A stretch of 62,506 nucleotides of DNA from Ministeria vibrans ATCC 50519. Lineage: Eukaryota; Protista; Filasterea. Shown here piece by piece: positions 5,989 to 30,496 of the stretch. Numbering within the stretch: the stretch's first letter is position 1; the number at the start of each line of letters is the position of its first letter. Below the pieces are notes generated by a model. That model did no database searches and was not told the origin of the DNA. It saw only the letters and a list, made by a program, of their open reading frames with translations. The DNA lies in assembly GCA_943704425.1 (NCBI GenBank), contig CALSCP010001961.1, positions 1-62,506 on the forward strand. Direction: 5' to 3'. Position numbers and translations under genes: made by a program.

Positions 5989-6805
5989 TTTGTTTTTTTT
6001 TTTGTGCGTCTACGTGTGCGTATAGCGCCACGAAACGGTAGATATGCCCATGACATCAACCTACGATGAATATGGTCGACTGCCAGGAGCACCGCGTGCC
6101 GATGCGCTTATTCCCGAGGACCATCTGCACACCGCGGGACCTGCCACCAACCGCACCGAAGTTCGAGACAACTACACACCACACGACGCGCGATACGAGC
6201 CACCACGCAGGGCACCCCAGTCGCGCAACGAGCCCGAGGGACACTTTGAAGGGGCAACCACCTACAACAAGGCCTATGTTGAGAAGGAGGTGCCGCGTGC
6301 ACCCCCGCGCACCTTTGGTGACGGCGTCTACCGCCCGGGGCCCATGCTTCTCGACACTGAGTACAACGAGCAGTACAAGGAGAAGGACATTTGTCGCTGC
6401 GGTCAAGGCGAAGTCCGTATTCTCTTCCATGAAATGGGCACAGGTACATTATATATTTTATATATGTGCACGTGTGGGTGTACTGTATCGCGTGTGTTTT
6501 TTGTCTCCGTTTTTTATACAAAAATTGTCATACATTGACACGCGCTCATGAATATAGGTCCTTCGACGGATTGGGAGCGAGTGCCTGAGAAAATGCGAGG
6601 AGTGGGCGGCGGACACATTCGCGTTGGAGACACAGAAGTGCACGCACAGAAGACGGTGTATGCACGTGACGGGCAGTCACTTGTGCAGGGTCGTGACTTT
6701 AAGTTTCTTACATCGCGCGAAAAGGTACAAAATAAGAATAATAATAATAATAATAATTAGAAGAAGAATACAACCCATTTATTAATTATAATAATAACAA
6801 TAATA

Positions 6806-6840
<35 letters not shown>

Positions 6841-6846
6841 TATGTT

Positions 6847-6916
<70 letters not shown>

Positions 6917-6921
6917 TAATA

Positions 6922-6961
<40 letters not shown>

Positions 6962-7899
6962 TAATAAGTTTTCTTTGTGTTTTCCTTGCTTTCATTGACC
7001 ACGGGGCCTTATGTGTATGTATGTAGGAACTTGAAAGGCAACGACGCAATCGTGGAACAATGATGGGCAATGCGTCAGGTGCGAACACAAGGACGACGAC
7101 CACGTCATCAGTGGGGCGCACGCCCTCGCTGGGATCCTCCGCTCTACTGTCGACAGCCACGGCAGTACGCTCGATGTCGTCGGCACAACGCCCCGTTGAT
7201 GGCCCTAGCTATAGGCCTGCCACTCATGATCATGGCCCTCTCCACGAGGGCTCCATGTATCGCTCTGAAGGACTGCGTCGGTCGTACTCGTCTCAGCAGG
7301 GGTATAAAAGCTCAACGGGCACTTCTCATGCCGGTGCGCCCTCGCCCTCCCCCACTCGCGGAATGAGTAACACCTTTCATTACGGTTCGACGAGCAGTGT
7401 TGCCTCTCAGGCATACCCTCCCTCGGGCTATGCCACTGCCCCTTACATCCATCCTCCGGAGCCCGAAAAAGCGGCCACAGCGACCTCCAAGGGGGGAAAG
7501 AGCAAGTCCAATCCGGGTCAGATCACTACGCGACGCTCCTCCATGAAGCATAAGTCCTCAACCCCCGACACCACAACCACCACCACCACTGTCAGTACAG
7601 GCCCAAATTCGACTGCGCGCCGACAAAAATCTCTCTTGCGCTCCGTCTCCTTTGAAGCTCCCTGTGTCCATCCGGCGCCTTCCAAGTCTGGTGGCGGTGC
7701 AAGCGCGGGCGTCTCCGGCTCGGCGTGGCGTCCGGCTGCTCGCCACGACGCAAGCGCCGGCGGGAGCAAGCGAGTGCGTGCCTCGCGACGCGCCGACCTT
7801 GGACGCAAGACATTTGACTCGATGGACGAAGGGCACAAGGAAATGGTAGGTCAATTCTTTACATATGTAGTCTTTGTTCTGAGACAAAATGACTCATTA

Positions 7900-7930
<31 letters not shown>

Positions 7931-8592
7931 TTTATTATTGTTCCTAATCTTATTATTCTTATTATTCTTATTATGATTAGTACCGCTATCAAACGACCAA
8001 GCAACAAATGAATGGAGTGCTGCGCGACTCAAGTCCTCAGCGTGTCCCGTCCGTGCCACAGGGCGCGTCAGCACTGAGCACGTCTCTGGGACACTCCAAC
8101 GTGTACTCGTCTCGTGTGCCCACACACGCGAGCTCTGCGGGGCTAGCCAATGGTACAGCAGCTGGCGCGGGCACACGTGGCCACAACTCAAGTGCGACAA
8201 TGAGTCACAGTGGTAGCAGCGCTCGTCGTGGCGATGATGGTGTGGGTGGCACTGCTTCTAGTACAGCGGTCGGTCGCAGCATGTCGTCGACTTTTGTCAC
8301 GCACGCAGGCTCACGCTCACAGGTTGGCGATGGTCATTTGGAGTCATACAAGTCGTTGGGTCGACACCACTCCAACGGCGGTAGTAATGGCGGTGGCACG
8401 ACCACGACAACAACTCGCCTAGTGCATGGCACAGGGTCAGGCACGGACGGTGGCACCTTCAACCGCAGCTCCACGTCATCGCGTGCGGGCTCGACTGTCT
8501 CCTTTCACGCCACTGACCCCTCTACTTCCGTTTCCCAGCCAGCTACCACCCGCACTGTCACAACGCGAAAGTTTTCTTACAGCAAGCAATGA
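5009..8592 (+). CDS. SAXO/FAM154-like microtubule-stabilising protein with a long Ser/Thr/Gly-rich tail (multi-exon)
   Basis: Repeated Mn-type motifs NTDYRREY, PFDGKTTHRTDF, TEVRDNY, HFEGATTYNKAY and DTEYNEQY. GT-AG introns near 5151-5375, 5516-5591, 5899-6025, 6444-6557, 6725-7026 and 7846-7980. Boundaries are approximate. Confidence 0.65.
6737..6966. repeat. (AAT)n microsatellite in an intron
   Basis: Long aat array. Similar arrays lie at 5929-5987, 20410-20475, 38330-38380 and 45895-46062. Confidence 0.95.
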
Positions 8593-9067
8593 AATTCATC
8601 AAAAACAATTTTTATGCAAGCTTTTTTGCAGCCTGTAGGGAGAGCTTCCGAAGACTTCACTTAGACTTGGGGTTCGCCAAGAATCGAGAAGGTGCTGACA
8701 TTTTCCTCGCCGAGGGTTGACCAAGGGGAGGACGGACTTCGGACGGACATTTTGAAACGGTTTCTCGGATGTACCTTCGATGTACCTCCTCGGATGCACA
8801 TCCACGAACCGCATCGTACCTTCTAATAAATAGACCCCTCAGTGGCATGCTCAAGATTGCGCTGACATCCAAAGGCAACTCATTTTCACTGTTCCGCTGG
8901 ATTGTTAAGGACGAATAATTGGAAGAAGAAGAAATTTCGAAGACATTTACAAATTATAATACAAAACAAAATAATATTATTATAAAAATCAAATTAATTA
9001 TTAAAAGTCACACTATTATTGTTTTACTATAGAAGAGAGTCCCATTCGTTGAGTGCTTCCACAATCA

Positions 9068-13689
<4,622 letters not shown>

Positions 13690-13957
13690 ACTGAAATCAA
13701 GAAACAATGAAAAATTGAAAATTTACAGATTTGAATCGAGTCATTCGAGTGCGAGACTACTGAAGAGCCATATCAAAATAAAAAAGGAAGACAATGTAGA
13801 CTAACCCCGAAAAAGGTAAAGCGCCCCTAGGCCCACGAGGGCCAAGAGCCAAGGGTCAAGGCGGGCTAGAATACGCTCTCATAGCAAGCGAGCGTACGAA
13901 GAATTCGAGGATATTTACAGTAATTTGTTCAGTTGTACAAAAGGTATTACTCCGGTA

Positions 13958-15352
13958 TTACAGCTCTTCATTGCTCTTGCTTTTGCGGCGCTCCTTGATA
14001 TCGGTGTTTTTCGTCGACTGGGTGGGCTGCACTGCCATACGAACTTCGAGGGAAAGTCGTGTTCCAGTAAAATTGATGATAGGTGCTCGGTGGGACAAGG
14101 CGGTGTGTCCTGGGACAACAAGCAGACGCCCTGCAAACGGTTTGATCAGCGAAAGGGCATCTGGATCCCACTCTGTCCCGGTGAAAGTGTCCTCCGCACT
14201 CCCGTACACCGCTGTTTCACCACAATCTTGAGTCGCGCACCCCTGCGTGACAAACGCAACAAGTGCAAACCTCTCATCGTCTCCGCCCTGTTCGTCGGCC
14301 TCGCCAGCACTGCGAATGCGCGGCTCATCTGAGTGAGCACCTAGCTGTAGTGTGATGGACGTGACACGAACGTCGGAGATTCGGGTGCCCGTGAGCGTCT
14401 CAACGGCGGTCAGGACACCTCTCTGGAGAACCTCACGCCACAAAGGCATGGTAACAAAATTTTCGGGTGCGATGGTGCCTTCAAACAGTCGGGTCTTCAA
14501 CGCAAAAGCTTTGCTCGAGGCGTCGCGATCCGCTGTGTTCACTTGTGCACGAGACGAAGTCCACAGTGCAGCCGACATGAGCTGGTGGGCCAGCGCAGCA
14601 TCCTCGCCAAAGACCCCGTCCACGACCGCCATTCGAGCCAAGTGTGGAGCCTGTTGAATCACACGAAGCGTATCAAGGGCCAACGGCTGAAAGGTTGACG
14701 GTACATCGACGGAGGTGACAAGCGGCGTCAGCGCGTACGGTTGTGGATGTGCCAGCATGAGCACCTGCAAGCGACGCACAGCGTACGACGGTGGACGCAC
14801 AAAAAAACGAACGCGATCGTCGAGACGCATCAGACGACCGTGTACGTGATGAACGGAGGCGACCACAGTGTAATTGTCGACGTCGTCCAGTGCGACAAGT
14901 TCACCATAATCATTTCGATTCCAAATTTCGCCCAGAAAGCCCACTATCAAATCTTGCCCTGTACCCTCCGTGTCATGTACAATCTGTGTCTCGTCGCCTC
15001 GTGCAACCGCTACACATCTGACGTGCGCATCGTCAAGCGACAGCGTCGGCGCGTGCCGCAACAGCGCTGCAAACTCGTCGCGCGTCGAATCGTCGCACTG
15101 CGCAGACCACTCAAAGGCACATGCGGTCACGTCACCCCCCACACACGTGCGTCTGTTTTGCCATCGACACCGGTGCAGACAGGCATCGAGAGCCTTGCGA
15201 GCGGCCCCTTCCTCGCGCTCCTTCACCGTCAACAGTTGGATTCCATGTCCCAGCGACGTTTGCCATTTTCGAGGGAGCGCCGCCGTAAAGGGCCCCATTG
15301 CGGCAAGAACAAGTAGAAGACCCACTAAGCGGGTATGGATCGGGGCGTTCAT
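13958..15352 (-). CDS. Signal-peptide protein with a C-terminal prolyl-hydroxylase-like 2OG-Fe(II) oxygenase fold, ending NEEL
   Basis: Intronless ORF. Signal MNAPIHTRLVGLLLVLAAMGPFTAA. C-terminal FALVAFV..CGETAVY..IKPFAGRLLVVPG..HRAP..RLSLEVR resembles the P4H-like beta-helix. KDEL-like end. Confidence 0.55.
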   Translation of the reverse strand: MNAPIHTRLVGLLLVLAAMGPFTAALPRKWQTSLGHGIQLLTVKEREEGAARKALDACLHRCRWQNRRTCVGGDVTACAFEWSAQCDDSTRDEFAALLRHAPTLSLDDAHVRCVAVARGDETQIVHDTEGTGQDLIVGFLGEIWNRNDYGELVALDDVDNYTVVASVHHVHGRLMRLDDRVRFFVRPPSYAVRRLQVLMLAHPQPYALTPLVTSVDVPSTFQPLALDTLRVIQQAPHLARMAVVDGVFGEDAALAHQLMSAALWTSSRAQVNTADRDASSKAFALKTRLFEGTIAPENFVTMPLWREVLQRGVLTAVETLTGTRISDVRVTSITLQLGAHSDEPRIRSAGEADEQGGDDERFALVAFVTQGCATQDCGETAVYGSAEDTFTGTEWDPDALSLIKPFAGRLLVVPGHTALSHRAPIINFTGTRLSLEVRMAVQPTQSTKNTDIKERRKSKSNEEL

Positions 15353-15783
15353 AAAGTAAAACGAAACTGACTGAACGATCAAATATTATTCAATGTAGTG
15401 TAAAACACTATACAAAGCTTCCGGGCGGAGTGAGTTCCGGCATAGGCGCATAGACTAGCCCCAAGAAGACAGAAGTCAAAGAAGATGGAATACTGTTATT
15501 ACTATTATATTATTAGGAATAAATGAAGTCGAAAAGTTTACTCAAAAAGAAGGAGAGAGAGAGAGAGAAATATTAATACACATATAAAAGAGAGTAATAC
15601 AATGCTTCCGCCACGGACTAACTCCAAAAAGATGGGGCGCCCATAGACCCACAAATACTTATTACTATTACTATTATTACTATTATAAGTGTATAATTAT
15701 TTTTGCATTCTCGATTCTCTATTTATGTTCTCTTATAACTTAATGAGTATTATTATTATATGACTTAATTCCAGTTCGACACG

Positions 15784-16431
15784 ATGAGCGACACTACTAG
15801 GGACACTACTGCTGAAGCAATTATAAAGATGCATGACGCTCGCGCCGAGAGTTACTCGAACGAAATGATGGAAGAAATCACAAAACCAATGTACTCGGAG
15901 CGCATCCCGCGTTTCGTTGCGGCTTGCCCAGACCAAGGGCCACTTATCGACGTCGGATGTGGCAGCGGGGACTGTTTGGCGCTCGTACACCAGCGCTTTC
16001 CGGACATTCCGCTTCTGGGCTGCGATGTCTCTTCCGAAATGGTCAAGATCGCCCGCCACCGCGTGCCCAGTGCCACCATCACACAGAGCAGCGGCTCGGC
16101 TCTTAGCGAGCAGCCAAGCAGCGTCCGTGGCATTCTATCCTATTTTGTGATTCACTTCCTCTGCGCTGACGAACTGGCGACCGCAGCGGCGTCGTGGAGC
16201 ACTGCACTGTGCGCAGGCGGGCGTCTGTTGCTTGGCTTCTGGGTGGGCGAGCCTGGCAGCACTATGGAGTTTGGCGAGCAATGGGTGCACGTCCAGGCAA
16301 CGTACAACTCGCGTGCCGAGGTCGTCTTGGCGCTCACCACTGCTGGACTGGCCATTGTGCGAAGTGAAGAGGAGGAGGACCCCGACATGTGTATGATGAT
16401 GGGCTTCATTGAAGCAATCAAGAAGGATTGA
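15784..16431 (+). CDS. Class I SAM-dependent methyltransferase
   Basis: Motif I LIDVGCGSG, GCDVSSEMVKIAR, YFVIHF and LCAGGRLLL. Intronless. Confidence 0.9.
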   Translation: MSDTTRDTTAEAIIKMHDARAESYSNEMMEEITKPMYSERIPRFVAACPDQGPLIDVGCGSGDCLALVHQRFPDIPLLGCDVSSEMVKIARHRVPSATITQSSGSALSEQPSSVRGILSYFVIHFLCADELATAAASWSTALCAGGRLLLGFWVGEPGSTMEFGEQWVHVQATYNSRAEVVLALTTAGLAIVRSEEEEDPDMCMMMGFIEAIKKD

Positions 16432-16637
16432 AATCAGTGTAAACGGGGGAGAGAAAGCAAGCGCAGTCCTGGAGCGGACAAACGATACTCCTGCAGACAG
16501 ACAGACAGTGAGTGAGTGAGTGAGTGAGTGAGTCCTGCTCGACATGTTCTTGGTGCACTTTTCGAAACTTCTCTGTGACAATACGATCGGGGGTTTTAAT
16601 CATCAGTACTCCCTGAAGCAGAACAAAAATCAGGCCC

Positions 16638-17316
16638 TCACTCACAAATGGGAGGCGTTCGCAAGTAATCTGCATTGTGAAGGGACGGCTCGTAGTCATG
16701 GAAGGTCAGGTACGAGTCGAAATCGGAGGGAGCGCCCTTGTACGCCATGTACTGTGCCACGGGAATGTGTGTACCGTGCTGCAGCCAGAACATGCCCTCG
16801 GTGCTCTGTGTGGGCAGGTGGACGGCGAAGGAGTACTCGTCGGAGAGAACCCCCTCACGCATCACCGTCGCGCGAAAGTGCACGTCGGAAGGCACAAACG
16901 CGCCAAAGGAAGGCAAAGGCAGTTTGCTGCACTCGGCAATCCCCGCACTGGTGATGCTCATGCCGTAGCCAAAACTGGCGCTGGGCGGTGAGTGAAAAAT
17001 GGTTTGAGCTCCGAACTTCCCTGTCATGTCCTGGCGCGTCAAGTTGTTAGTCAGGTCGTAGTAGAGACGTCCTTCCATGATGAGGCTGTTGGTTGTGTTG
17101 TCTGCGTTGAATCCTTCGTAGCGTTGGACGTAGCCGGTCGTAAAGGTTGACGTTGACAGCACTATATGGAACCACAACAACCGCAAATGCAAAGAAGATA
17201 GTTGAATGGAACTCCACCTCTCAGCCATGGTGCGTACAGTCGCGCAACGGAACCGACGACGTAAACACCGAGGCCACACACATCAAGAGGACGACGAGAG
17301 TGAGAGTGTGAGGCAT
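16638..17316 (-). CDS. Secreted ependymin-related-like protein (2 exons)
   Basis: Signal MPHTLTLVVLLMCVASVFTS, intron ~17163-17237. GRLYYDLTNNLTRQD, ECSKLPL and C-terminal PPIC resemble ependymin-related proteins. Confidence 0.55.
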
Positions 17317-17412
17317 GCCAGAAAAAATAACACAAAAAAAAATAATAATAATAATAATTATTATAATAAAAAAATATAATATTGATTCAAACTTTTTTTT
17401 AAAAAAAAACTC

Positions 17413-18169
17413 ATGCGACACACCCTGATCACCCACTGTATCATTGTCGGCTTAATAGCACTTTCTGCTGATGGCGAAACCACCGCCAATTGCACGATCA
17501 CTACAAATCGGACTTGCAATGACCTTTCTCCCGAATGCTTTTCCTGCGCCCTTGCCTCTCCCTGCACCTTTGGTCAGCCCACCAATCTCACATGTAGCCC
17601 CATTGGCGACAGCATTCCAAATTGCAGCGTACGTGCTGTCTCCTTGTCAGCTCTATCTGTTTACTCCATTCGTATGTAGACTCGACATGTCCAAGCCGAG
17701 TGTCAATTCTGTTTTCAAGTGACCAACACGTCGCTTGTGCGCTGCACCGATCGACTCGGGTGCAACACACACGACACCGATGGTCTCTTCTACGTCTCCA
17801 CCTGCCGCGTTGTCGACGACGCCTTCTACTGTGCCGGCAATCGCACGTACGAGCGGAAGCGCCCGTGCAACTGGTCGAGTGGCCACTCTTACTGGACGTC
17901 TCTTTTGCTCTCGGTCACCCTCGGGGGATTTGGAGCGGATCGCTTCTATCTCGGGTACAACGGTCTTGGGATTCTGAAGTTTTTCACCTTCGGTGGACTC
18001 GGCGTGTGGTAATAAGAATCTGCATCATTCTCATTCTCATTGTTGTTATGATTCGATCTTAATCGTCACCAACCGCCTTCGTATATGGTTCACTTGTAGG
18101 ACCTTCGTTGATGCTTTTCTCATCTCCATTGGCTATCTGACACCGGCAGACGGGAGCTTGTACTTATAA
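17413..18169 (+). CDS. TM2D3: TM2 domain-containing protein 3 (almondex-like), 3 exons
   Basis: Signal peptide and Cys-rich ectodomain, then CNWSSGHSYWTSLLLSVTLGGFGADRFYLG..KFFTFGGLGVWTFVDAFLISIGYLTPADGSLYL*, which closely matches the TM2D3 C-terminus. Confidence 0.88.
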
Positions 18170-18363
18170 ACTGTTGGTTGTGTGTTTCTTTCAGCTTTCA
18201 TCATTATACACAATGTATATTGAACCAAACAAACGATTCCAAGGTTGACACTCCTTTAGACACAGATTTCACTGACTTGAGACTCTTGAGTGAGTCACTT
18301 CAGTCTATTCATCATCATCCCTTCGGCCTGTTTCCGCTCACCACCCCTGGGCAGCCCAGAGTG

Positions 18364-21300
18364 ATGCTTCTTCTGTCTCTGCTCTTGGCAGTCCTTTTGG
18401 AATCCACCAAGACCGCAGCCCTTACCGCAAACTTTGCCGAAAATTTCTCCTCAACTCTGTTAAACACCAACTTTTGGTCAACGACCGGGTCAAGCGGCTA
18501 CGACACGTCAACAACGCAGTGTGGGCAAGTCGACAGCAACGGAGACGTACGTTGTTTGAGGTTTCTTCTCCTGTCAACACTGAACATTCTTTTTTCTCCT
18601 TCTTGTCGCTTTGATGTCTGTAGAACCTCATCTTCAAGAGCAACGTGCAATCGCGCATCCTTCTCACGGACGAAATCGACGCCAGCAACATCGTCTTCAT
18701 CTCCTTTCTCATGCTGAACGGAGGGACGTGCAACGCCGCAGAGGACGACGAGCCCGTCGACTTTCAGGTGGTGCTCAACTCGGGCTCCACCGTTACCCTC
18801 GCCTCCACCTCCACCTCCGCTTCCGTGCAGTCCTTCCACATCCCATTGCACAGCAGCTACCAGGTCCACGGCGTGCGCTTCCGCTGGATACAGTCTAACT
18901 TTGGCAGAAACAGCGACATTTGGCTGCTCGACAACGTCCTCTTCTCCATCACGCCCTTGCCCACGCTCATCTACCAGCCCCGCTGGACAGCTTCCCAAGG
19001 TACCGCTTCCTGGCAGTCACTAGGCAGTGGTACAGTGTCCACCACTGCTTGCGGTGCCTCAGATGTCCTCTCCTACGCCAGCTCCACCACCATTGTCTCT
19101 CGTGTGCTCACCTCCCAAGCAATCTCCGCCGCGTCCAATAGCATCGTTGCTCAATTTGAGCTGCGAATCGGCTGCAACAACGACTTTGAACTCGACGAAA
19201 GATATCCCGTAAGAACTTTTCATAACAAAGAGAGAGAGAAAAAATAAACAAAAACGTCGTGTGTGTTTTATTGTGATAGGTTGCCTTCCAGTATTCTATC
19301 AATGACGGTTCCACATGGCTCGACACTGCGATAGACTGCGACAAGAACCAGCAGTCTTCGTCGTGCACTAGCTTTGGCGAACCCTGGTTGCAGTACCCTT
19401 CGTCGTTTGTTCAGTGGCGTCGTGTCACTCTGACCTTTAATGTGCCCACTCGAAGTCTCACCTTCCGCTTTATGCAATCTGACTGCAACGGCTTCTTTTG
19501 TGCCCAAGCGTCCACCGTTCAGTTTGCACTGGGCCAAGTAGTAATTACAGGTGCTTGCTCGGGCTGCTCGGGCCACGGCTGGTGCACCGACGTCGCGGAC
19601 GAATGCGTGTGCGACGCGGGCTTCACCGGCGACGCGTGTCAGACTATCATCACTCCAAGCACACTTCCCACTTCCCTGCGCGAATCCTTTGACAAGTAAG
19701 CACTTTTTTTTGTGTGTGTTTTTCCTCTCTTCATAATTATGTGACCCTATTCTTGTACCAATTCACCTTCTTGCCCCAGTTTTGCCCCGGAACTCACAGC
19801 CATCTCCGGTAACACTGTCGGCACCGTGTTGGACACATCGCGATGGGCTTACTCGGCGCTTGCTGGCATCTACATTGGCTGCTGGTGCAACAACTGTAAT
19901 CCCCCGTTGACCAACATGACTGGCGGTGCTGGCTTTACTGCGTCCACTCACTGGCGCCAAATGGTGTCAACGCAACTCGATCTTACCGCCGTCGCTCTGC
20001 CCACCCTCTTTTTTTACTACTCCGACTACTTCTCTGCGACATGCAGCCCCTCCACTAACGACAGCCCTTTCCTTGCCACCACTCTCGACAACGGCATCTC
20101 ATGGTCCAAAGTTGCCCACCTTGGCTCCGGCTCGCCCGTTCCCACCTTCCATGCCTTCCGCATGCCCGTCTCTTCTACCACCGCAACCTCTTTCGCCTTC
20201 ATGCAACCACTTGCGTCCGCTGTTTTGGCCGACTCTTGGCTTGTCGACGGTGTCGTTGTTGACTCGCCCACCGCCTCCTCTCTCACCGACGGTGCCCTCT
20301 TGGAGTCCTTTGACCTCACACCCTCTCCTTCTTACTGGATCTACCTCACCGGTGCCACTCTTGGCTCTTACTGCTCATCATCGTAATCATTGAATAGTTC
20401 TTTTGATTCAATAATAATAATAATATTAATAATAATAATAATAATTATTATTATTATTATTTTTATTATTATTATTAATTTTTTTTCTTCTTCTTTCTAG
20501 TGGTGACGCGGTCTTGTTTGTGGAGGACCGTCTTCGCGTGGCCATGACCAAGTCGGTGCCGGTATCGGCGACTGCCGCACCCATGATTCAGTTTGACCTG
20601 ACCATGGGCTGTAGTAGTGGCCTGGCCACGGCGAGCCTGTCGCTCGATGTCTCGTTTGACGGCGGTCTCTCCTGGACCGCGGCCGTGCCCGAGTCGGCGT
20701 ACGCATCGCTTGCGAATGCTCATACATCTGTTGCCTCCTCGTTTCCCTCGCTCTACGCACCCGGTGTGTATGGGCTCACGCCAGGATTTACTCGTGTCAC
20801 TGTCGACCTCGTCAATGTCATGGCCAAGAGCAGTGCCGAAGTTACAGACGTGATGGCACGCTGGACGCTTCTCAATGACGATGGAAACTCCTATATGCCC
20901 CACAGCAACTTTGCTTTGGACAATGTCTACGTGGGCGATCGTTGTCCCAGCTTGTGCTCGGGCTTTGGCGCGTGTCGTCTCAGCGGCGCCCCTGCCGTGT
21001 TTGGCTGTGTCTGCGACTCGTTTGGCTTGTACGGTTCCTTCTCCTCGAGCGACTGTAGCGTCGCGTCGGGCACGGAAACGCTTGCAGCCGGTGTCGCCGA
21101 GAGTGCCGTTGCAGAGATCATTCCACCGTGGAACATGCCGTTGTGGACGAATCAGAATGGTGTATTCCCAACGTACTTTAGCACAGGCGAGCCGGCGTCC
21201 ACAGCGTGCACCAGCGATGGCCAGGCGGCGTTTGTCTTCAAAGGGCCCGCTCGACTGCTCACAACCTTTCCGCTTGACGTGTCGTCGTCCCTGGCTGAAA

Positions 21301-24300
21301 TTACTTTTCGCATGCAAACTCGCGATACAAGCGAAACAACCAATGTTTGCAGTCGCTCCAGTGCCAACACCGCGGTCACTGCCTCCGTTGTATTGCTCTA
21401 CTCTACCAATAACTTCTTGACGACCCACACGCTCGCAACCTACGACGACAAGCCTGTCATGACGACGTACACGGTGCCGCTGCCAACGGCTGCTCGCACT
21501 TCGCACACGTCGTTTATGTGGACGCAACTGAATGCGTCGCTGGCGGACAGCGACTACTGGTATATGTCGGCTATCCTTGTGGGTGTTCCCGAGTGCAGTA
21601 CATCGTCGTGTCTCAATGGCGGCACCTGTTCAGTCTCACTTTCAGGCTTTACCACACTTACCACGTGCGCGTGCCCTTTGTTTTACACAGGCCTGCGCTG
21701 CGAGACACAATTAGCCACGCCATGTCTGCCGGATCCCTGCAATGGCCACGGAACGTGCCAGGCCAAGCAAGAAGAAGAAGGTATCTTCATTTGTACTTGC
21801 GACTCGGGGTACACCGGTGCCACGTGTGACCAGGACGTAGACGAGTGTGCCTCGTCACCATGCGCGCCTACTGCCACCTGTGTCAATGGTCTCGATGCCT
21901 ACTCGTGCTCATGTCGCCCAGGCGACACGGGTGTCAAGTGTGACGTAAATATTGATGAGTGTGCCTCGTCACCCTGTCTCAACGGCGCACTCTGCACCGA
22001 GACGCAGCCGAATGGGTACAACTGCCAGTGTGCCTCGGGCTACACCGGATCTCAGTGTGCCAACGAAATCAACGAGTGTTCCTCCAACCCTTGTCTCAAC
22101 GGTGGTCAGTGCAGCAACTTGGTCAATGGCTTCACTTGCGCCTGTGTCGCCGGATACACTGGCGTGCTCTGTGGCGTCGACACGAACGAGTGTAGCTCAA
22201 CACCTTGTGGTCTTGGCGCCACCTGCAACAATCTTATCAACGCTTTCGAGTGCACCTGTCCCCCCGGTATTACGGGCGAGCAGTGCACCGTCGACATTGA
22301 CGAGTGCGCAAGTTCGCCGTGTCTCAATGGTGGCGACTGCCTCGACGCGTTAGATACCTTCTTGTGCAATTGCCTGGCGGGCTACACAGGCGCTCTGTGC
22401 GTTGTCAACGTGGACGAATGTGCCAGCACGCCCTGCCTCAACGGTGGCACGTGTGTCGACGAGGTGAACGCTTTCGCCTGCAATTGTATGGCGGGATTCT
22501 TTGATCCTATTTGCTCTTCACCTGTCGACGAGTGTGCCAGCTCGCCCTGTGGACCAGAAGCAGTGAGCTGCAACGACGTGCATTTAGGGTACGAGTGTGT
22601 GTGCAAGGCAGGTCTGACGGGCGTGCTGTGCGAGAGTGAAGTGGATGAGTGCGCCTCATCTCCGTGTGTACACGGCTCTTGCGAAGACCAATTGGGCGCC
22701 TTTGTGTGCGCCTGCTTTGCAGGTTGGACCGGTGACTTGTGTGCAGACACTATTGACGAGTGTGCGAGTACGCCGTGCCACAACGGTGGCACCTGTGTGG
22801 ACGCGGTCGATGGCTACACGTGTCTTTGCGTACTAGGATGGATCGGTGGCGAGTGCGAGACAAACGTTGACGAGTGTGCTTCGTCGCCCTGTCAGAATGG
22901 CGGCACTTGTCTTGACAATGTTGGCTCTTTCACTTGTGAATGTGTTGGGACGGGATATGCTGGTGCACACTGCGAGAGTAACATTGACGAGTGTGTGTCG
23001 TTGCCCTGTCAGAATGGCGGGCTGTGCATCGACGGGGTAGGCATGTTCACGTGCACATGTACCAACGCGACTTTTACGGGACTGACGTGTGAGAGTGAGG
23101 TGGACGAGTGTGCTTCGTCGCCGTGCCTTAACGGCGCCATTTGTGCCGACGGATTGGGAATGTATGAGTGCGAGTGTGCTCCCGGCTACACAGGAAGTGC
23201 CTGTGAGAGCGATATAGACGAGTGCGCCTCGTCACCGTGCCAGAACGGCGGGAATTGTCTCGATGCAGTTGGAAAATTTGAGTGTGACTGTGTCGTGGTG
23301 GGTTTCAAGGGTGTGCTGTGCGAAAGCGAGGTAGACGAGTGCATCTCGTCTCCTTGCCAAAACGGTGGAGTGTGTACCGACCAGGGAACCATGTACCTGT
23401 GTGACTGCGCGACGACTGGCCACACAGGAGTCTTGTGCGAGAGTGGTATTGACGAGTGTGCGTCGTCACCGTGTCAGCACGGCGGCGTGTGCACTTCGGG
23501 GATCGACCGCTATGATTGCGATTGTTTTGGCACTGGCTACACCGGTGTGGTGTGCGAAGCAGAAATCGACGAGTGTGACTCGTGTCCGTGTCAGCATGGT
23601 GCGACGTGTAAAGATCTCTTGCACCGCTTTGTGTGTCAATGCAGCCAAATTGGCTATACTGGAGACCAGTGTGAGACACTTATTGACGAGTGTGTCTCGT
23701 CACCTTGTCAAAATAACGGTCAGTGCAGCGACCGCGTAGGCGGTTTTCAGTGCGCGTGTGCCAATGGCTTTACCGGAGCCACATGCGACGTGAATATTGA
23801 CGAATGTCTGAGCGAGCCGTGTGTCAATGGGGGAACGTGTGTTGACGACATTGCCTCATCGGTGTGTCTATGTGAGGCGGCGCACACGGGTGTGCAGTGT
23901 GAGTCGTCCGTCGATTTTTGTGCGAGCAGTCCGTGCGTCAACACGGGTGTATGCTCCAGCGGAAACCGTCAACACGAGTGTGCCTGTCCTGCGAGTTACA
24001 CGGGTGTCGCATGTGAGGTTGAAATCAACGAGTGTGAAAGCAGTCCGTGCCTGCACGGTGCGACGTGTACGGATATGGTGGGGTTCTATACGTGCCTGTG
24101 TCACGCTGGATTCATCGGAGATGTGTGCGAGACGGACGTTGATGAGTGTCTGAGCGCTCCTTGTGAGAATGTTGGGACGTGCATGAACGAGCTGGGCAGT
24201 TTCCGTTGTGTGTGTGCCACTGGATGGTTTGGCAATGTATGCGAGACCAACACCGATGAGTGTTCGTCGTCGCCGTGCGGCGTCAATGCGCTTGCGTGCC

Positions 24301-27300
24301 AAGATGTCGTCGGTGGATACACATGTGAGTGCTTGCCTGGGTTCACCGGCGAGACCTGCTTAGTGGACGTTGATGAATGTGCGAGTTCACCCTGTGCTCA
24401 CGCTGGCGTATGTACCGATGCTTTAAACAGTTACTTGTGCGCATGCGTGTCGGGGTTTACTGGCCTCATGTGCGAGACGGACGTGGACGAGTGCACAAGC
24501 AGTCCGTGTTTAAACGGCGCGACTTGTGTGGACCAGCCGAATGTTTTTCGCTGTTCTTGCTTGCCCGGTTACACTGGCGGGTTGTGTGAGACAGACGTAG
24601 ATGACTGCGCCAGCTCGCCATGTGATCCAAGTGCAACCTGTGTGAACAATGCTGGACACTATGCGTGTGAGTGTGCGCTTGGCTTGACTGGCGAGACGTG
24701 TGCTGTTGACATTGATGAGTGTGCGAGCAGCCCTTGTGCGAACGGTGGCACCTGTACTAACCTTCTTGGGCGCTATGAGTGTGTGTGTGACATGGGGCAC
24801 ACGGGTGCTCTGTGCGACCAGCTGCTCGTGATATGTGCCTCTGCAACATGTTTAAATGGCGGCACTTGTATTGGTAGCTCGCACAACTTGACCTGCGTGT
24901 GTCAGTCTGGTTTTATGGGTGATAACTGTGAGGAGGATGCATGCGGTTCATCGCCATGTCAGAATGGCGGAGCGTGTCGAGTCGATGTTGAAGTGGTGTG
25001 TGACTGTGACGCTGCATGGACAGGTGCTCTGTGCGAATTGGCTTTTGACCCGTGCGCTTCGTCGCCCTGCCAGAACGCCGGTACCTGTCTGACCGGCGCT
25101 GCGTCATTTGTGTGTGTTTGCCAGGCAGGAATCAGCGGTGCTTTGTGCGCCAACGATACTTTGGAGTGCGCCTCTTCGCCCTGTCAGAATGGTGGTTCCT
25201 GTCTTGAATTGATGGTAACTGGTGGCTACTCGTGTGCGTGCACTGGAGAGTTTTTTGGAGCTTCCTGCGAGCAAACATCCTCGTCTGTGTGCAGCCCACA
25301 GCCGTGTCTCAATGGCGGCAGTTGTGTCGACGATCTTAGCTCGGCGGTGTGCTTTTGCCCGAGCAACTTTACGGGTGAGCTATGCGAGACAGTGGTTGTG
25401 GCCGCGTGTGCGTCGTTTCCCTGTGCCAACGGTGGGGCATGCTTCGAAAGCACAAATGGCTATATGTGCACGTGCGAGACGGGGTTCTCTGGCGTGCACT
25501 GCGAGAACACCGTTGAGTCTCGCTGCGACTCTAGTCCCTGCCTTAATGGTGCCACCTGCGCCGACTCTGTGTGCTACTGTGACTTTGGCTACTCTGGTGA
25601 GTCCTGCGAATCACTTCTTTTACTGTGTGACTCGAGTCCATGTGACAACGGAGGCACGTGTGCCGAGGGAGTTTCTGGATTTGAGTGTATTTGCGCCACC
25701 ACGTTTACGGGGGCGACGTGTACCACCTCTCTTGTTGTAATGTTGCCCTGTGCTTCTTTTCCCTGTACCAACGGCGGTACGTGTGTTGAGAGCGGCAGCG
25801 CTTTTGCGTGCACTTGTGCTGATGGGTTCACTGGGGTTCACTGTGACAGCGCGATTGCGGATGTGTGTGAGTCGTCGCCCTGTACCAACGGGGGAACATG
25901 CCTTGTTGATGTCTCGGGNNNNNNACGTGCACTTGTGCTGATGGGTTCACTGGGGTTCACTGTGACAGCGCGATTGCGGATGTGTGTGAGTCGTCGCCCT
26001 GTACCAACGGGGGAACATGCCTTGTTGATGTCTCGGGCATTTACATGTGCACTTGTGCTGATGGGTTCACTGGGGTTCACTGTGACAGCGCGATTGCGGA
26101 TGTGTGTGAGTCGTCGCCCTGTACCAACGGGGGAACATGCCTTGTTGATGTCTCGGGCATTTACATGTGCACTTGTGCTGATGGGTTCACTGGGGTTCAC
26201 TGTGACAGCGCGATTGCGGATGTGTGTGAGTCGTCGCCCTGTACCAACGGGGGAACATGCCTTGTTGATGTCTCGGGCATTTACATGTGTACTTGTGCTG
26301 ATGGGTTCACTGGGGTTCACTGTGACAGCGCGATTGCGGATGTGTGTGAGTCGTCGCCCTGTACCAACGGGGGAACATGCCTTGTTGATGTCTCGGGCAT
26401 TTACATGTGTACTTGTGCTGATGGGTTCACTGGGGTTCACTGTGACAGCGCGATTGCGGATGTGTGTGAGTCGTCGCCCTGTACCAACGGGGGAACATGC
26501 CTTGTTGATGTCTCGGGCATTTACATGTGTACTTGTGCTGATGGGTTCACTGGGGTTCACTGTGACAGCGCGATTGCGGATGTGTGTGAGTCGTCGCCTT
26601 GTCAGAATGCGGGTACCTGTACCGTTGAGATGAGCGGGTTTGCTTGTGAATGCGCCAGTGGCTTTGGCGGTACCCGGTGTGCTCTGAATTTGGACGATTG
26701 TACGTCGTCTCCATGCCAAAATGGCGCGACCTGTGTGGACGGCACTCAATCCCACACTTGTGAATGCGCCAGTGGGTTTTTTGGCCCACTGTGCGATGCA
26801 ATATTCGATTCGTGTGCGTCGTCACCTTGCGCACATGGTAGCACCTGCTTCAACTCAGCCGCTGACTTTAGTTGCGTGTGTCGATCGGGATTCGCGGGAG
26901 CTCTCTGTGAGAGCGATATTGAGGAGTGTGCTTCTTCGCCCTGCCTGAATGGCGCAACATGCCTGGAGGAGATCCACGATCAGTTCAGCTGTGTCTGTCC
27001 TACCGGCTTTTTTGGCATTATTTGTGATGCTCAGGTCGACTTGTGTGCTTCGCTGCCATGTCATAATGGCGCAACGTGCTCTAGCTTGGCCTCGACTTTC
27101 GTGTGCACGTGCTCCTTGGGGTACAGTGGCGATTTTTGTGAACAAGATGTGGACGAGTGTGCGTCGTCACCGTGCCAGAGCGGTGCTACTTGTACCGACC
27201 AAGTGGATGTGTTTGTGTGCACATGTCCGAGCGGGTTTTCTGGCGCACGATGCTTTGTCGACATGGACGAGTGCAATTCATCTCCGTGCCAGAACTCTGC

Positions 27301-30300
27301 GACCTGCATTGACGACATCAATGCATTTGCATGTGAGTGTCCTGATGGTTTCTTTGGCGTGGTGTGCGATGCGACAATTGATTTCTGTGCTTCCTCTCCC
27401 TGTCACAACAGCGGTACATGCTCGTCATCATCCAATGACTTTACTTGCGAGTGTGTGTCGGGAACAACCGGAAGTGTCTGTGATGTGGGTCTGGACGAGT
27501 GTTCATCATCTCCCTGTCAGAATGGTGCAACATGTGGCGTTGGAGCGAGCGGCTTCACCTGCTCTTGTGCAGCAGGTTTTGCAGATTTATTGTGCTCGAC
27601 TGGCATTGACGAGTGCGCTTCGTCTCCTTGTCAGAATGGTGCAACGTGTAGCGACAACACCAACGGATTTGCGTGTGTGTGCTCTACGGGCTTTATGGAT
27701 GCACTGTGCTCGACTGGCATTGACGAGTGCGCTTCGTCTCCTTGTCAGAATGGTGCAACGTGTAGCGACAACATCAACGGATTTGCGTGTGTGTGCTCTA
27801 CGGGCTTTATGGATGCACTGTGCTCGACTGTCATTGACGAGTGCACTTCGTCTCCTTGTCAGAATGGCGCAACGTGTAGCATTGGTGCGAGTGACTACAT
27901 TTGCTCTTGTGCAACGGGTTTTACAGATTCACTGTGCTCGACTGTCATTGACGAGTGCGCTTCGTCTCCCTGTCAGAATGGCGCAACGTGTAACAACACC
28001 AGCGATGGATTCGTGTGTGTGTGTCCCGTAAGCTATGTAGGCACACTGTGTTTGTTGCGCGGGGGCATTATGACACCCGCTGGCGGGATTATAGCTGTCG
28101 ACTCGGTGGCGTTTGAGTTTGCAGTGGGTGCCATCTCGAGTACAGTGACGGTTGTGGTCGAGGAGATACCCTTTTCTTCATCCCGATCGACCACACTGCC
28201 ATCGAGCGTCGACGTGGCTCCGTCCAGTGCCTTTCGCATGTCGATTGCTGCTTTCTCCATCGGCCAGACCTTCTCGGCCGACGTGCAGGTGACGCTTGTA
28301 GTGGCGGGCTCTCCATCAAACCTCCTTCTTTTCTGGTCGGCTCTCGCCGGTACCGACGGGTGGTCCATGACCGCGTCGGTGGTATCGCGTCGACGCACTC
28401 TTGGTGTGTGTCCCTCCAATGCAGTGTGTGGCGGTATTTCATCACCCGGTTTTATCGCCCCGTTCGCAGTCGACGAGTGTGCATCGTCGCCATGTCACAA
28501 TGGCGGCACATGCGCCGACGGACTTGGGTTGTTCACGTGTACGTGTGCCGCTGGATTTACGGGCAGCGAGTGCGCTGTGAACATTGACGAGTGTGCATCG
28601 GCTCCGTGCGTCAATGGCGGCACCTGCGTGGATCAGGTGGCGAGCCATTTGTGCGTGTGCGACGCGGGGTTCACCGGGGCGGTGTGTGATGGGGTTGTCG
28701 GGGGCACGCCGTCGTCGTCGTCGGCCGGCGGCGGCTTCTCTATGGTGATCATAGTTGCTATTGTGTGTGTCGTGCTGATAGTACTTGTTGTCGTTGGCGT
28801 GGTGGTGTACCGGAAATACGGTCGTCGCCGACGACGCCAGAGCGCGCCCATTGGCAAGCGAGACAAGAACGAGGCGCTCGACGATTTCGAATTAATGGGC
28901 ATGCACTCGTCGGCGGCGCTCGTGCGCAATCCGTCGGGCATGTCACTGGTGTCGTCGTCGCAAGCTCCGCTCATGCTTGGTAACTCGGACGTGGTTGGTG
29001 GCGATGAAATTGAGGCGGCGGTGGCGTCTCTGTCGGCCGAAGAACGTCACAGTCTCGATGTCAAGTATGGCATGTTTGGCAAGCACGACGAGGCCAAATT
29101 TGGCAGCAATGCGCGCGTCGTGTCGCTGACGTCGAGGCGCGGCGATCCCGACTACTACTGCGAGGCAAGCATGCCTGCAGGTGCTTCTTACAGCGTTGCC
29201 GGAGTCACGTCAAATTATGTCAATGCAGTGCCGAGTGGTACTGATGCCGGAATGGGCGCCACCGCTACTCCCGACACAGACTATGCACAGTTGGGCATCG
29301 TGAATGTAGGGGTGCGAGCTACGGCTTCCGAGGGTGACTATGCAAACATGGACATGCAGCCGGACGTGGCGGTGATGGAACTGCGGCCGCGAGAGGAGCC
29401 TGGTGACGACTATGCTGATTATGCGCGACTGCGTGAGCGCGATGTTGAGGCGCTCTATGCGACGGCGGTGCCACGGATTCGCCAGCGGTCGCGCGCCATG
29501 TCGCGACCCGTTACGTATGTGATGGGCAGTGAGTTGGTAGACGGCGTGACGGCGGTGCCGGTTGAGGTGGAGCCCATGTATGCGTCGTTGACGAGCGTCT
29601 CCGAGTTTGACCGGGCTCGTCTGACCATCGAGGATGAGATTGGCGAGGGCGAGTTTGGCCGAGTTCTGCTTGCGACGGCGACTGGTTTTGCAAGCGCGCC
29701 ACACACGCGCAACGTTGCCGTGAAAATGCTGAAGGATGGTGCGAGCGACGGCGACATGAACGAGTTCCTTGAGGAAGGCAAGTTGTTGGGGAGGTTCTCG
29801 CACTCCAATGTGCTCGGGCTGGAAGGTCTGTGTGTGGCTCAGCGGCCCTGGCTGCTCATCCTCGAGTATGCGCCGCATGGCGATCTACGCAACTTTCTGC
29901 GCTGCTGTGCGACCCTCGAGGGCATGGAAGTGTCGGTGCGCGAGCAGCTTGACATTGCGCGGCAGATTGCCTCGGGCATGGCCTACCTCGCCGGGAACCA
30001 GTTTGTACACCGCGATCTTGCGGCGCGCAACTGCCTTGTGGGCAGTGGGACTTGCATTAAGATTGCCGACTTTGGTCTGTCGCATCTGCTCGACGGCAAG
30101 GACTACTACCGCATGGACACGAAGAAGAAGCTGCCGGTGCGCTGGATGTCGCTCGAGTCTATCTTGTATCGGACCTTCTCGCTGCCATCGGACGTGTGGT
30201 CGTTTGGGATTGTCATGTGGGAGATTATGACGTTTGGCACGGTGCGACCGTACAAAGGAATGCAAGCGAAGGACATTGTGATGATGTTGGTGAGCGGTCA

Positions 30301-30496
30301 GCGCCTGAGCGCGCCCGCCGACTGCCCCGACGATGCCTTTGCCATCATGCGCAGCTGCTGGCGCGACAAGCCCGCTGACCGTCCCTCTTTTGCCCAGCTT
30401 GCCGATCAGTTACGTCTCCTTGTTGACTCTCGCATTTCCCAGACACTGCGTGACGTTGCTGCCGAGCTGGAGCTCTTGTCTGCGACGGATGTGTGA
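18364..30496 (+). CDS. Giant receptor tyrosine kinase: signal peptide, Reelin-like repeats, ~56 tandem EGF, ZU5-like, 2 EGF, TM, tyrosine kinase
   Basis: Exons 18364-18546, 18624-19208, 19280-19695, 19779-20382 and 20501-30496. The frame break at 25919-25924 is an N gap. TM at ~28742-28810. Kinase motifs [31 protein letters not shown] and SDVWSFG. Confidence 0.9.
25810..26598 (+). repeat. 120-bp near-identical coding tandem repeat (one EGF per unit, ~6.5 copies) with an assembly gap
   Basis: Sequence lines repeat with a period of 120. The unit encodes [40 protein letters not shown]. Confidence 0.95.

What the first reader, a model, noticed from the sequence alone, without database searches (positions are those of the whole stretch)
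18364..30496. Reelin-like repeats, a Notch-like EGF array and a tyrosine kinase in one ~3900-aa receptor
Seen: one spliced reading frame links a signal peptide, Reelin-like repeats, 56 tandem EGFs (hand count), a ZU5-like insert, 2 more EGFs, a TM helix and an intact tyrosine kinase. Established: animal Reelin is a secreted ligand that signals through separate receptors and Src-family kinases, and Notch has up to 36 EGFs and no kinase. Inference: this is a domain-shuffled receptor that joins a Reelin-type head to its own kinase. I do not recognise the architecture from animals. Unicellular holozoans have many lineage-specific receptor kinases, so novelty needs a search.
Basis: partly seen in the sequence, partly recalled or inferred. 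Interest (0 to 1): 0.88.

Follow-up and report, generated by a model that had tools for sequence, protein, structure and literature searches.

The report
Reelin-repeat, 56-EGF receptor tyrosine kinase
A single-celled relative of animals (probably the marine filasterean Ministeria vibrans) encodes and transcribes a roughly 3,900-residue membrane receptor. It joins true Reelin repeats, at least 56 Notch-style EGF modules, a ZU5/GAIN-like stalk domain and an intact tyrosine kinase, a combination I found in no other organism.

Summary

**Gene model.** A five-exon gene on the + strand (ATG 18364, stop 30494-30496) reads in one frame. RNA contigs from two runs skip all four predicted introns. A DNA run is colinear with the window.

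**The N gap.** The 6-N gap at 25919-25924 lies inside a near-identical 120-bp EGF tandem array. The two large ORFs rejoin in frame if the gap holds 7+120n bases, which is what the repeat period predicts.

**Architecture.**
- signal peptide
- five Reelin subrepeats with two EGFs (about 2.5 Reelin repeats)
- 56 tandem EGFs, a lower bound
- a 142-residue insert with a ZU5/GAIN-B fold
- two more EGFs
- a transmembrane helix
- a 277-residue tyrosine-rich juxtamembrane segment
- a complete tyrosine kinase, ending in ATDV

**Context.** The gene is neither a Reelin nor a Notch orthologue. It belongs to a lineage-specific receptor-kinase radiation in this genome. At least two paralogues on other contigs also carry Reelin repeats plus a kinase, one of them in a single uninterrupted 4,764-codon ORF. 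This scan had already flagged such Reelin-repeat kinases on other DNA of this genome (s1-761891, s1-770239, s1-774556).

**Novelty.** Searches of public proteins found Reelin repeats only in animal Reelins and a few bacterial or environmental proteins, never with a kinase. I rate it a new variant of a known kind, of moderately high interest.

The parts
18364..18546 (+). Exon 1: start codon, signal-peptide-like N-terminus ([19 protein letters not shown]) and the start of Reelin subrepeat 1
   Evidence: The donor GT is at 18547. X2 RNA contig record 13 begins at about 18289 and skips 18547-18623.
18624..19208 (+). Exon 2: rest of Reelin subrepeat 1 and the first part of subrepeat 2
   Evidence: Pfam PF21471 at 2.8e-18. 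The RNA contigs end the exon at 19208.
19280..19695 (+). Exon 3: end of subrepeat 2 (Asp-box SINDGSTW), the first head EGF (about 19556-19640), and the start of subrepeat 3
   Evidence: Pfam PF21471 at 1.9e-5 and EGF_Teneurin / EGF_2 hits. blastp to lizard Reelin gives 3e-15. Both flanking introns are skipped in X1 and X2.
19780..20382 (+). Exon 4: Reelin subrepeat 3 (Asp-box TLDNGISW) and the start of subrepeat 4
   Evidence: Pfam PF21471 at 5e-6. blastp to Reelin gives 2.5e-13. Splicing is seen in X1 record 2 and X2 record 14.
20501..30496 (+). Exon 5: a single exon of about 10 kb carrying the rest of the protein and the stop codon. It is interrupted only by the 6-N assembly gap.
   Evidence: The acceptor AG is at 20499-20500. 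The RNA contig records carry the five letters 20501-20505 between the mapped pieces.
20502..21590 (+). One complete Reelin repeat: subrepeat 4 (Asp-box SFDGGLSW), EGF at 20943-21056, then subrepeat 5
   Evidence: Pfam PF21471 at 7.4e-23 with two stretches. PDB Reelin chains 3a7q, 2e26, 2ddu, 7lyu and 6a48 match at 9e-22 to 1e-12.
21594..28051 (+). Array of 56 tandem EGF modules (a lower bound)
   Evidence: Regex count. Of 56 modules the script scored (54 of this array plus the two membrane-proximal EGFs), 52 carry C1-x-S-x-[PA]-C2, 40 carry C2-x4-[ST]-C3 and 17 carry the calcium-binding N-terminal consensus.
25808..26602 (+). Near-identical 120-bp tandem array (one EGF per unit) containing the N gap at 25919-25924
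   Evidence: TRF reports period 120, 6.6 copies and 98% matches. The frames rejoin if the gap holds 7+120n bases.
28052..28477 (+). ZU5/GAIN-B-like beta-sandwich insert with an invariant Arg-Arg and two invariant Cys
   Evidence: AF2 gives pLDDT 82 and pTM 0.77, with the RRR in the only loop below pLDDT 50. Foldseek matches ankyrin ZU5 at E 1e-4 with TM 0.63-0.70. VIA gives Z 12.2 for ZU5 and Z 8-9 for GAIN domains. There are 17 paralogous copies in the genome.
28478..28687 (+). Two membrane-proximal EGF modules
28742..28807 (+). Transmembrane helix, followed by a basic stop-transfer stretch ([10 protein letters not shown])
28808..29620 (+). Cytoplasmic juxtamembrane region with 12 further tyrosines beyond the YRKY stop-transfer, including YVNA, YANM, YAQL and YASL
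   Evidence: The motif reading as SH2-docking sites is inference.
29621..30412 (+). Tyrosine kinase domain with all catalytic motifs
   Evidence: Pfam PF07714 at 4.4e-87. It is the best PF07714 match in the genome, at 9.6e-88. The motifs are read.
30413..30496 (+). C-terminal tail ending in ATDV (the shape of a class I PDZ-binding motif) and the stop codon

Best explanation
**What it is.** One expressed gene encodes a type I receptor tyrosine kinase of about 3,930 residues or more. From the N-terminus it has:
- a signal peptide
- about 2.5 Reelin repeats (five jelly-roll subrepeats and two EGFs)
- a rod of at least 56 EGF modules with Notch-type O-glucose and O-fucose consensus sites
- a ZU5/GAIN-B-like beta-sandwich
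- two EGFs
- one TM helix
- a tyrosine-rich docking segment
- an intact tyrosine kinase
- a PDZ-type tail

**Where it belongs.** It is a member of a lineage-specific radiation of receptor kinases in a filasterean-type unicellular holozoan, probably Ministeria vibrans. In that radiation a shared chassis of EGFs, a ZU5-like domain, a TM helix and a kinase carries different heads. The heads seen here are Reelin repeats in at least three genes, Receptor-L domains, and LamG plus a 7TM domain.

**What is shown.** The gene structure, transcription and splicing of the 5' 5.9 kb, the domain content, the catalytic motifs, and the paralogues.

**What is inferred.**
- The Reelin head at the tip of a roughly 150-nm EGF rod binds a ligand or another cell surface.
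- Clustering then lets the kinases phosphorylate each other on the activation-loop YY and on the juxtamembrane tyrosines.
- Those tyrosines recruit SH2 or PTB proteins.
- More speculatively, the invariant RR(R) in the exposed loop of the ZU5-like domain is cut by a kexin/furin-type convertase. The ectodomain would then stay attached non-covalently, as in Notch S1 processing or adhesion-GPCR GAIN domains.
For: - Exon borders, phases and the absence of stops.
- Spliced RNA contigs in two runs and a colinear DNA run.
- The same 120-bp unit on both sides of the gap, with frames that rejoin at 7+120n bases.
- Pfam domains. PDB Reelin matches. blastp of each head exon to animal Reelins.
- EGF count and consensus sites.
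- ZU5 fold.
- Insert paralogues next to kinases, with invariant R114, R115, C120 and C126.
- Paralogue C86 has 16 Reelin subrepeats, EGFs, the ZU5-like domain, a TM helix and a kinase in one uninterrupted 4,764-codon ORF.
- C2128 carries more than 25 subrepeats with a kinase downstream on the same strand.
- In the kinase tree this gene groups with own-genome and marine-metagenome kinases, apart from animal MuSK/Ror and a Capsaspora Eph-like kinase.
- The genome encodes two proprotein-convertase P domains, an O-FucT and GT90 enzymes.
Against: - RNA evidence covers only 18100-24000. No read or contig was laid across the gap or over the kinase half.
- One RNA contig (X1 record 1) retains intron 1, which would stop translation after about 118 codons.
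- The signal peptide was judged by eye only.
- No ligand, no cleavage and no kinase activity has been shown.
- The RRR motif lacks an Arg at P4, so it fits a dibasic kexin-type site better than a furin site.
- The AF2 model of the head repeat was poor (pLDDT 47).
- The organism name is inferred from run dates and papers, not given.
Confidence: 0.78

Rival explanations
1. There are two genes, or an assembly chimera. The scaffold join at the N gap links an EGF-rich secreted Reelin-repeat protein to an unrelated EGF-rich receptor kinase, because both end in similar EGF repeats.
For: The gap exists, and the two ORFs are in different frames as assembled. The genome holds many EGF-rich paralogues, and RNA or DNA contigs cross-match within the array (table 5). 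No transcript was laid across the gap.
Against: The partial unit before the gap matches the units after it almost base for base, and the frames rejoin at exactly 7+120n bases. The downstream ORF has no start codon with a signal peptide; it would have to begin inside an EGF module. The upstream ORF has no stop or TM helix before the gap. Paralogue C86 shows the same module order in one gap-free ORF.
Confidence: 0.06
2. The 'Reelin' label is superficial. The head is a generic Asp-box jelly-roll or carbohydrate-binding module of the kind also found in bacterial surface proteins, and has no special relation to animal Reelin.
For: PF21471 also hits bacterial gliding-motility / PKD proteins (P0353-P0357). 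Identity to Reelin is only 24-33%. The paralogue C86 uses units of three subrepeats per EGF, not two. There is no reeler domain.
Against: Alignments span the whole subrepeat-EGF-subrepeat unit of solved Reelin repeats (2ddu residues 66-377). They also span amphioxus Reelin over 366 residues at 1e-19. The C86 paralogue scores 720 bits against vertebrate Reelin. Every strong hit of 74 and 24 hits is an animal Reelin, whereas bacterial hits are weak and cover about 10-20%.
Confidence: 0.1
3. It is mainly an adhesion or matrix protein. The huge ectodomain is shed, or acts as glue between cells or to prey, and the kinase plays a minor or no signalling role.
For: The ectodomain is very long. There is a conserved basic loop that could be a shedding site. 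Aggregation biology has been reported for the probable host species (PMC13366479).
Against: All catalytic motifs are intact, and the tyrosine-rich docking region and PDZ tail are preserved. The kinase is the best-scoring PF07714 match in the genome. The chassis is conserved across many paralogues.
Confidence: 0.06

Closest known systems
Animal Reelin (RELN)
   Same: It has the subrepeat-EGF-subrepeat Reelin repeat with Asp-box motifs. Sequence homology to solved Reelin repeats is E 9e-22, and to whole Reelins 1e-13 to 1e-19 per exon.
   Different: It has about 2.5 repeats, not eight. It has no reeler domain and no C-terminal basic region. It is membrane-anchored with its own kinase, whereas Reelin is a secreted ligand that signals through ApoER2/VLDLR, Dab1 and Src-family kinases (established knowledge).
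Notch
   Same: It has a long tandem EGF array with calcium-binding, O-glucose and O-fucose consensus sites. It has a membrane-proximal non-EGF module with a possible basic processing loop.
   Different: It has at least 56 EGFs against at most 36 in Notch. Pfam found no LNR, NOD or ANK domain. The membrane-proximal module has a ZU5/GAIN-B fold, and the cytoplasmic part is a kinase.
Lineage-specific receptor tyrosine kinases of filastereans and choanoflagellates
   Same: It is a type I receptor with a shuffled ectodomain on a tyrosine kinase that has no animal orthologue. The kinase is only 35-47% identical to any animal kinase. The idea of independent receptor-kinase radiations comes from Suga et al. 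2012, which I know only as cited in PMC4342544 and PMC8662651.
   Different: I did not find Reelin repeats, a 56-EGF rod or a ZU5-like stalk in any paper I could read. The Suga 2012 paper itself is not held in the library.
Own-genome paralogues on contigs C86 and C2128 (scan findings s1-761891, s1-770239, s1-774556)
   Same: They combine Reelin subrepeats, EGFs, the ZU5-like domain (shown for C86), a TM helix and a tyrosine kinase.
   Different: They carry 16 and more than 25 subrepeats but few EGFs. Their kinases are only 40% identical to this one and lie in a different, strongly supported subclade. This gene is the EGF-rich, Reelin-poor member.
ZU5 domains (ankyrin, UNC5, PIDD/FIIND) and GAIN subdomain B of adhesion GPCRs
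   Same: It shares the beta-sandwich fold: Z 12.2 over 131 of 142 residues for ankyrin ZU5, Z 8-9 for the CD97, BAI3, CELSR1 and GPR126 GAIN domains, and Z 5-6 for FIIND. Like GAIN, it is extracellular and close to the membrane.
   Different: There is no Pfam ZU5 match. There is no conserved His-Leu/Phe-Ser/Thr autoproteolysis triad. Instead it has an invariant RR in a disordered loop and one Cys pair. Known ZU5 domains are cytoplasmic.

Membership tests
Receptor tyrosine kinase (type I) | Cytoplasmic tyrosine kinase domain with the tyrosine-kinase-type catalytic loop | tested here: met
   PF07714 at 4.4e-87. [26 protein letters not shown] and an activation-loop YY are read.
Receptor tyrosine kinase (type I) | Single TM helix between the ectodomain and the kinase | tested here: met
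   A 22-residue hydrophobic run at 28742-28807, followed by RKYGRRRRR.
Receptor tyrosine kinase (type I) | N-terminal signal peptide | tested here: inconclusive
   The sequence [19 protein letters not shown] has the expected shape. No signal-peptide predictor was available.
Receptor tyrosine kinase (type I) | Tyrosine phosphotransfer activity | not testable with these tools
   This needs an in-vitro kinase assay.
Reelin (RELN orthologue) | Reelin repeat made of subrepeat A, EGF and subrepeat B | tested here: met
   PF21471 five times, with two intervening EGFs. PDB Reelin matches at 9e-22.
Reelin (RELN orthologue) | N-terminal reeler domain (PF02014) | tested here: not met
   No PF02014 hit in any exon, even at E up to 10. 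Animal Reelins carry it.
Reelin (RELN orthologue) | Eight consecutive Reelin repeats in a secreted protein without a TM helix | tested here: not met
   About 2.5 repeats, followed by an EGF array, a TM helix and a kinase.
Notch | Tandem EGF array with calcium-binding and O-glycosylation consensus sites | tested here: met
   52 of 56 O-glucose, 40 of 56 O-fucose and 17 of 56 calcium-binding consensus sites.
Notch | LNR repeats plus heterodimerisation domain, and an intracellular RAM-ANK region | tested here: not met
   Pfam found no Notch/LNR, NOD, NODP or ANK family in either exon-5 piece.
ZU5 / GAIN-B fold class | Beta-sandwich fold | tested here: met
   AF2 pLDDT 82. Foldseek E 1e-4 with TM 0.63-0.70. 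VIA Z 12.2 with rmsd 2.7 over 131 residues.
ZU5 / GAIN-B fold class | Sequence membership (Pfam PF00791 ZU5 or a GPS motif) | tested here: not met
   No Pfam hit other than a chance 0.11 match. There is no conserved H-[LF]-[ST] in the alignment of ten paralogues.

The most novel reading that the evidence does not exclude
The receptor is a force- or proteolysis-gated tyrosine kinase. A convertase cuts the invariant RR(R) loop of the ZU5/GAIN-like stalk. The roughly 150-nm Reelin-tipped EGF rod then stays attached only through the last two beta-strands. Pulling on the rod, by another cell, prey or matrix, releases it and switches on the kinase. This would combine the logic of Notch or adhesion GPCRs with a tyrosine-kinase output. 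The same stalk in at least 17 other receptors would make this a general signalling principle of the lineage. A corollary is that Reelin repeats began as receptor-kinase ectodomains before animals existed.
Probability: 0.15. Interest if true: 0.88.

Novelty: new variant of a known kind. Interest (0 to 1): 0.62.

Why it matters
**Origin of the Reelin repeat.** Reelin is described as a late-evolving animal matrix protein (PMC3308698). Finding true Reelin repeats in a unicellular relative of animals, wired directly to tyrosine kinases in at least three genes, moves the origin of the module before animals. It also raises the possibility that ligand and kinase pathway were once a single molecule.

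**How these receptor families diversify.** The gene shows a conserved chassis (EGFs, a ZU5/GAIN-like stalk, a TM helix and a kinase) carrying interchangeable heads. The stalk has an invariant basic loop and is shared by many receptors, which gives a concrete and testable processing hypothesis.

**A possible biological setting.** The probable host, Ministeria vibrans, aggregates and changes the expression of many tyrosine kinases while doing so (PMC13366479).

Tried and rejected
**Steps that gave nothing usable**
- AF2 of the head repeat 20502-21590 with a six-row alignment gave pLDDT 47. I did not use it for fold search, so the Reelin assignment rests on sequence.
- Pfam on the insert alone gave nothing.
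- The ESM Atlas gave only a weak ZU5 lead: 0.89 at rank 17.
- The kinase searches were dominated by multi-kinase proteins and animal MuSK/FGFR. The best single-domain relatives are unnamed marine metagenome fragments at 47-58% identity. None of the nine I checked carries PF21471.
- The ENA contig L052 carries a protein of more than 4,122 residues with 23 Reelin subrepeats. It shows no kinase motif within 6 kb downstream, and the gene continues beyond the flank, so this is undecided.
- Suga et al. 2012 (Sci Signal) is not held in the library, so I could not check whether partial MvPTK sequences were drawn with such domains.

**Limits on the evidence**
- The organism's name could not be obtained, because run labels are coded. 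The Ministeria vibrans assignment is an inference from three things: runs dated 2011, 2022 and 2025; a marine signal; and a 29.7-Mb assembly made from culture metagenomes.

- All searches used single exons or ORF pieces by reference.
- I sent no complex-prediction job, because no binding claim is made.
Full report
**Gene model.**
- The + strand between 18364 and 30496 holds one gene of five exons: 18364-18546, 18624-19208, 19280-19695, 19780-20382 and 20501-30496. Every intron has GT..AG borders, the exon phases keep a single frame, and no exon has an in-frame stop.
- I laid contigs of four public runs on 18100-24000. Two runs that behave as RNA (X1 and X2, same study) carry contigs that skip 19209-19279, 19696-19779 and 20383-20500. 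The tool masked 20404-20505, but the records hold exactly five extra letters there, which places the acceptor at 20501.
- X2 record 13 also skips 18547-18623. Its bin depth of 4.54 equals 7.45 x 120/197. X1 record 1 retains that first intron and runs on into the upstream gene, so an unproductive or read-through form exists as well.
- The run that behaves as DNA (X7) is colinear with the window. RNA contigs tile 20506-24000.

**The gap.**
- The six N at 25919-25924 lie in a 120-bp tandem array (25808-26602, 6.6 copies, 98% matches) in which each unit encodes one EGF.
- The partial unit before the gap matches the units after it almost base for base. Comparison with a full unit shows that seven bases are missing, plus any multiple of 120.
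- The upstream frame has two bases left over at 25917-25918. Adding seven bases makes the next codon start at 25925, which is the frame of the downstream ORF. The two large ORFs are therefore one reading frame broken only by an arbitrary gap length.
- The downstream ORF has no start with a signal peptide, and the upstream ORF has no stop or TM helix before the gap.
- I had no second reads call, so the gap and the 3' 6.5 kb have no direct transcript support.

**Domain content.**
- Pfam finds Reelin_subrepeat-B in exons 2, 3 (weak), 4 and twice in exon 5, many EGF families, and PK_Tyr_Ser-Thr at 4.4e-87.
- The head reads as subrepeat 1, subrepeat 2, EGF, subrepeat 3, subrepeat 4, EGF, subrepeat 5. 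That is two full Reelin repeats plus one extra subrepeat. Three subrepeats carry Asp-box motifs.
- A six-cysteine pattern finds 36 EGFs of the array before the gap and 18 between the gap and the insert. It is a lower bound.
- Two more EGFs follow the insert.
- Of the 56 modules the script scored, 52 carry the O-glucose consensus, 40 the O-fucose consensus and 17 the calcium-binding consensus. The genome encodes O-FucT and GT90 enzymes.
- The TM helix is at 28742-28807. A 277-residue segment with 12 further tyrosines follows it. The kinase has every catalytic motif, and the protein ends in ATDV.

**Is the head really Reelin-like?** Yes, at the level of the repeat.
- The exon-5 repeat matches only Reelin chains in the PDB (9e-22 to 1e-12). 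One alignment covers residues 66-377 of the solved repeat 3.
- Each head exon matches animal Reelins as well as, or better than, the paralogues in its own genome. For example, the exon-5 repeat scores 1e-19 over 366 residues against amphioxus Reelin.
- The gene is not a Reelin orthologue. It has no reeler domain and about 2.5 repeats instead of eight, and it is membrane-bound.
- It is not Notch either, because no LNR, NOD or ANK domain is present.

**The insert.**
- Residues encoded by 28052-28477 have no Pfam match. They do have 17 paralogous copies in the genome, several of them just upstream of kinase domains.
- An alignment of ten copies shows an invariant Arg-Arg and two invariant cysteines.
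- AF2 with that alignment gives pLDDT 82 and pTM 0.77. The only stretch below pLDDT 50 is the loop that holds the RRR, and it sits before the last two strands.
- Foldseek and the VIA aligner both rank ankyrin ZU5 first (Z 12.2, rmsd 2.7 over 131 of 142 residues). GAIN domains of adhesion GPCRs follow at Z 8-9, then FIIND at Z 5-6.
- The fold class is known for proteolysis that leaves two chains bound non-covalently. Here the classical autoproteolysis triad is absent.
- A dibasic convertase site is the better guess, and the genome has two convertase P domains. This step is inference.

**Genome context.**
- The assembly is 29.7 Mb in 2,860 contigs. PF21471 hits 65 places, concentrated on five contigs.
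- On C86 a single uninterrupted 4,764-codon ORF carries 16 subrepeats (in units of three subrepeats per EGF), further EGFs, the ZU5-like module, a TM helix and a tyrosine kinase.
- On C2128 a 6,560-codon ORF with more than 25 subrepeats is followed on the same strand by EGFs and a kinase.
- The architecture is therefore real and recurrent. This scan had already noted it on those pieces.
- The closest kinase paralogue (C945, 45% identity) has Receptor-L and EGF domains plus the same stalk. C2736 is EGF-only. C155 combines LamG, EGF, Receptor-L, a secretin-type 7TM domain and a tyrosine kinase.
- In a kinase tree the six genome copies and several marine metagenome fragments form one clade (84/89 support), apart from animal MuSK/Ror and a Capsaspora Eph-like kinase. 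Inside it, C155, C86, C2736 and C2128 form a 100/100 subclade that excludes this gene.
- Reelin heads therefore sit on kinases that are not each other's nearest relatives. This points to head shuffling, or repeated loss, on a shared chassis.

**Novelty search.**
- Two word-seeded searches with the C86 Reelin region covered proteins of 888 to 5,510 residues. They returned 74 and 24 hits. Apart from a handful of unnamed environmental (ENA/JGI/Logan) proteins carrying Reelin subrepeats, the strong hits are animal Reelins, sponge included, and the weak ones are bacterial surface proteins. None had a kinase.
- An exhaustive HMMER scan of 1.84 billion cluster representatives with the kinase found nothing above 58% identity. 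None of nine checked neighbours had Reelin subrepeats.
- The full-text library holds no paper that links Reelin with unicellular holozoans. The genome paper and the aggregation paper on Ministeria vibrans do not mention it.
- These are absences within limited tools. The 2012 kinome survey could not be read.

**Organism.** Run labels are coded. The evidence for the marine filasterean Ministeria vibrans is as follows:
- DNA runs of 2022 hold the stretch whole.
- A 2011 RNA run carries the same species label.
- 2025 RNA runs hold 72-93% of the stretch, which is the shortfall expected from introns.
- A seawater metatranscriptome holds a small share.
- The assembly was made from culture metagenomes.

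This is inference, not a result.

**Verdict.**
- The gene is a new variant of a known kind: a lineage-specific receptor tyrosine kinase with an ectodomain combination not found elsewhere.
- It is one of a small family of Reelin-repeat kinases in this genome.
- Exons were searched separately, by reference.

Noticed in passing
G000:C155:3-7730 (- strand; locus L050): A single 2,576-codon ORF carries DUF285, Laminin_G_3, EGFs, a Receptor L domain, a secretin/adhesion-type 7TM domain (residues 1753-1986) and then a tyrosine kinase (residues 2292-2553). It is a GPCR-tyrosine kinase fusion. PMC12716839 reports such fusions only in choanoflagellates and sponges, 'not in other holozoans'.
   Followed up: partly
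window 17413-18100 (+): A TM2-domain gene (GGFGADRFYLGY motif) lies directly upstream on the same strand. One RNA contig (X1 record 1) runs from it into exons 1-4 of the receptor, with intron 1 retained. This could be read-through, overlapping UTRs or a contig-assembly join.
   Followed up: partly
17 loci of G000, e.g. C1933:14177-14578, C99:48392-48796, C945:274315-274740, C807:18938-19285, C904:45902-46318: The ZU5/GAIN-like stalk module, with its invariant RR and Cys pair, recurs in many giant ORFs. Several copies sit next to tyrosine kinase domains. It looks like a family-wide membrane-proximal module of this lineage's receptors.
   Followed up: partly
L052 (ENA assembly contig, 38% GC), gene at 6001-18369 and fragments up to 24369: An unnamed eukaryote-like environmental contig encodes a protein of more than 4,122 residues with 23 Reelin subrepeats and further Reelin/EGF exons downstream. 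No kinase motif lies within the 6 kb fetched.
   Followed up: partly
window 27591-28023: A second, older tandem array (114-bp period, 3.8 copies, 85% matches) encodes four similar EGFs just before the ZU5-like insert. EGF number in this gene has therefore grown by repeated local duplication.
   Followed up: no
window 20404-20477 (intron 4): AAT/ATT microsatellites fill most of intron 4. Both the RNA and the DNA contigs break or are masked there.
   Followed up: no
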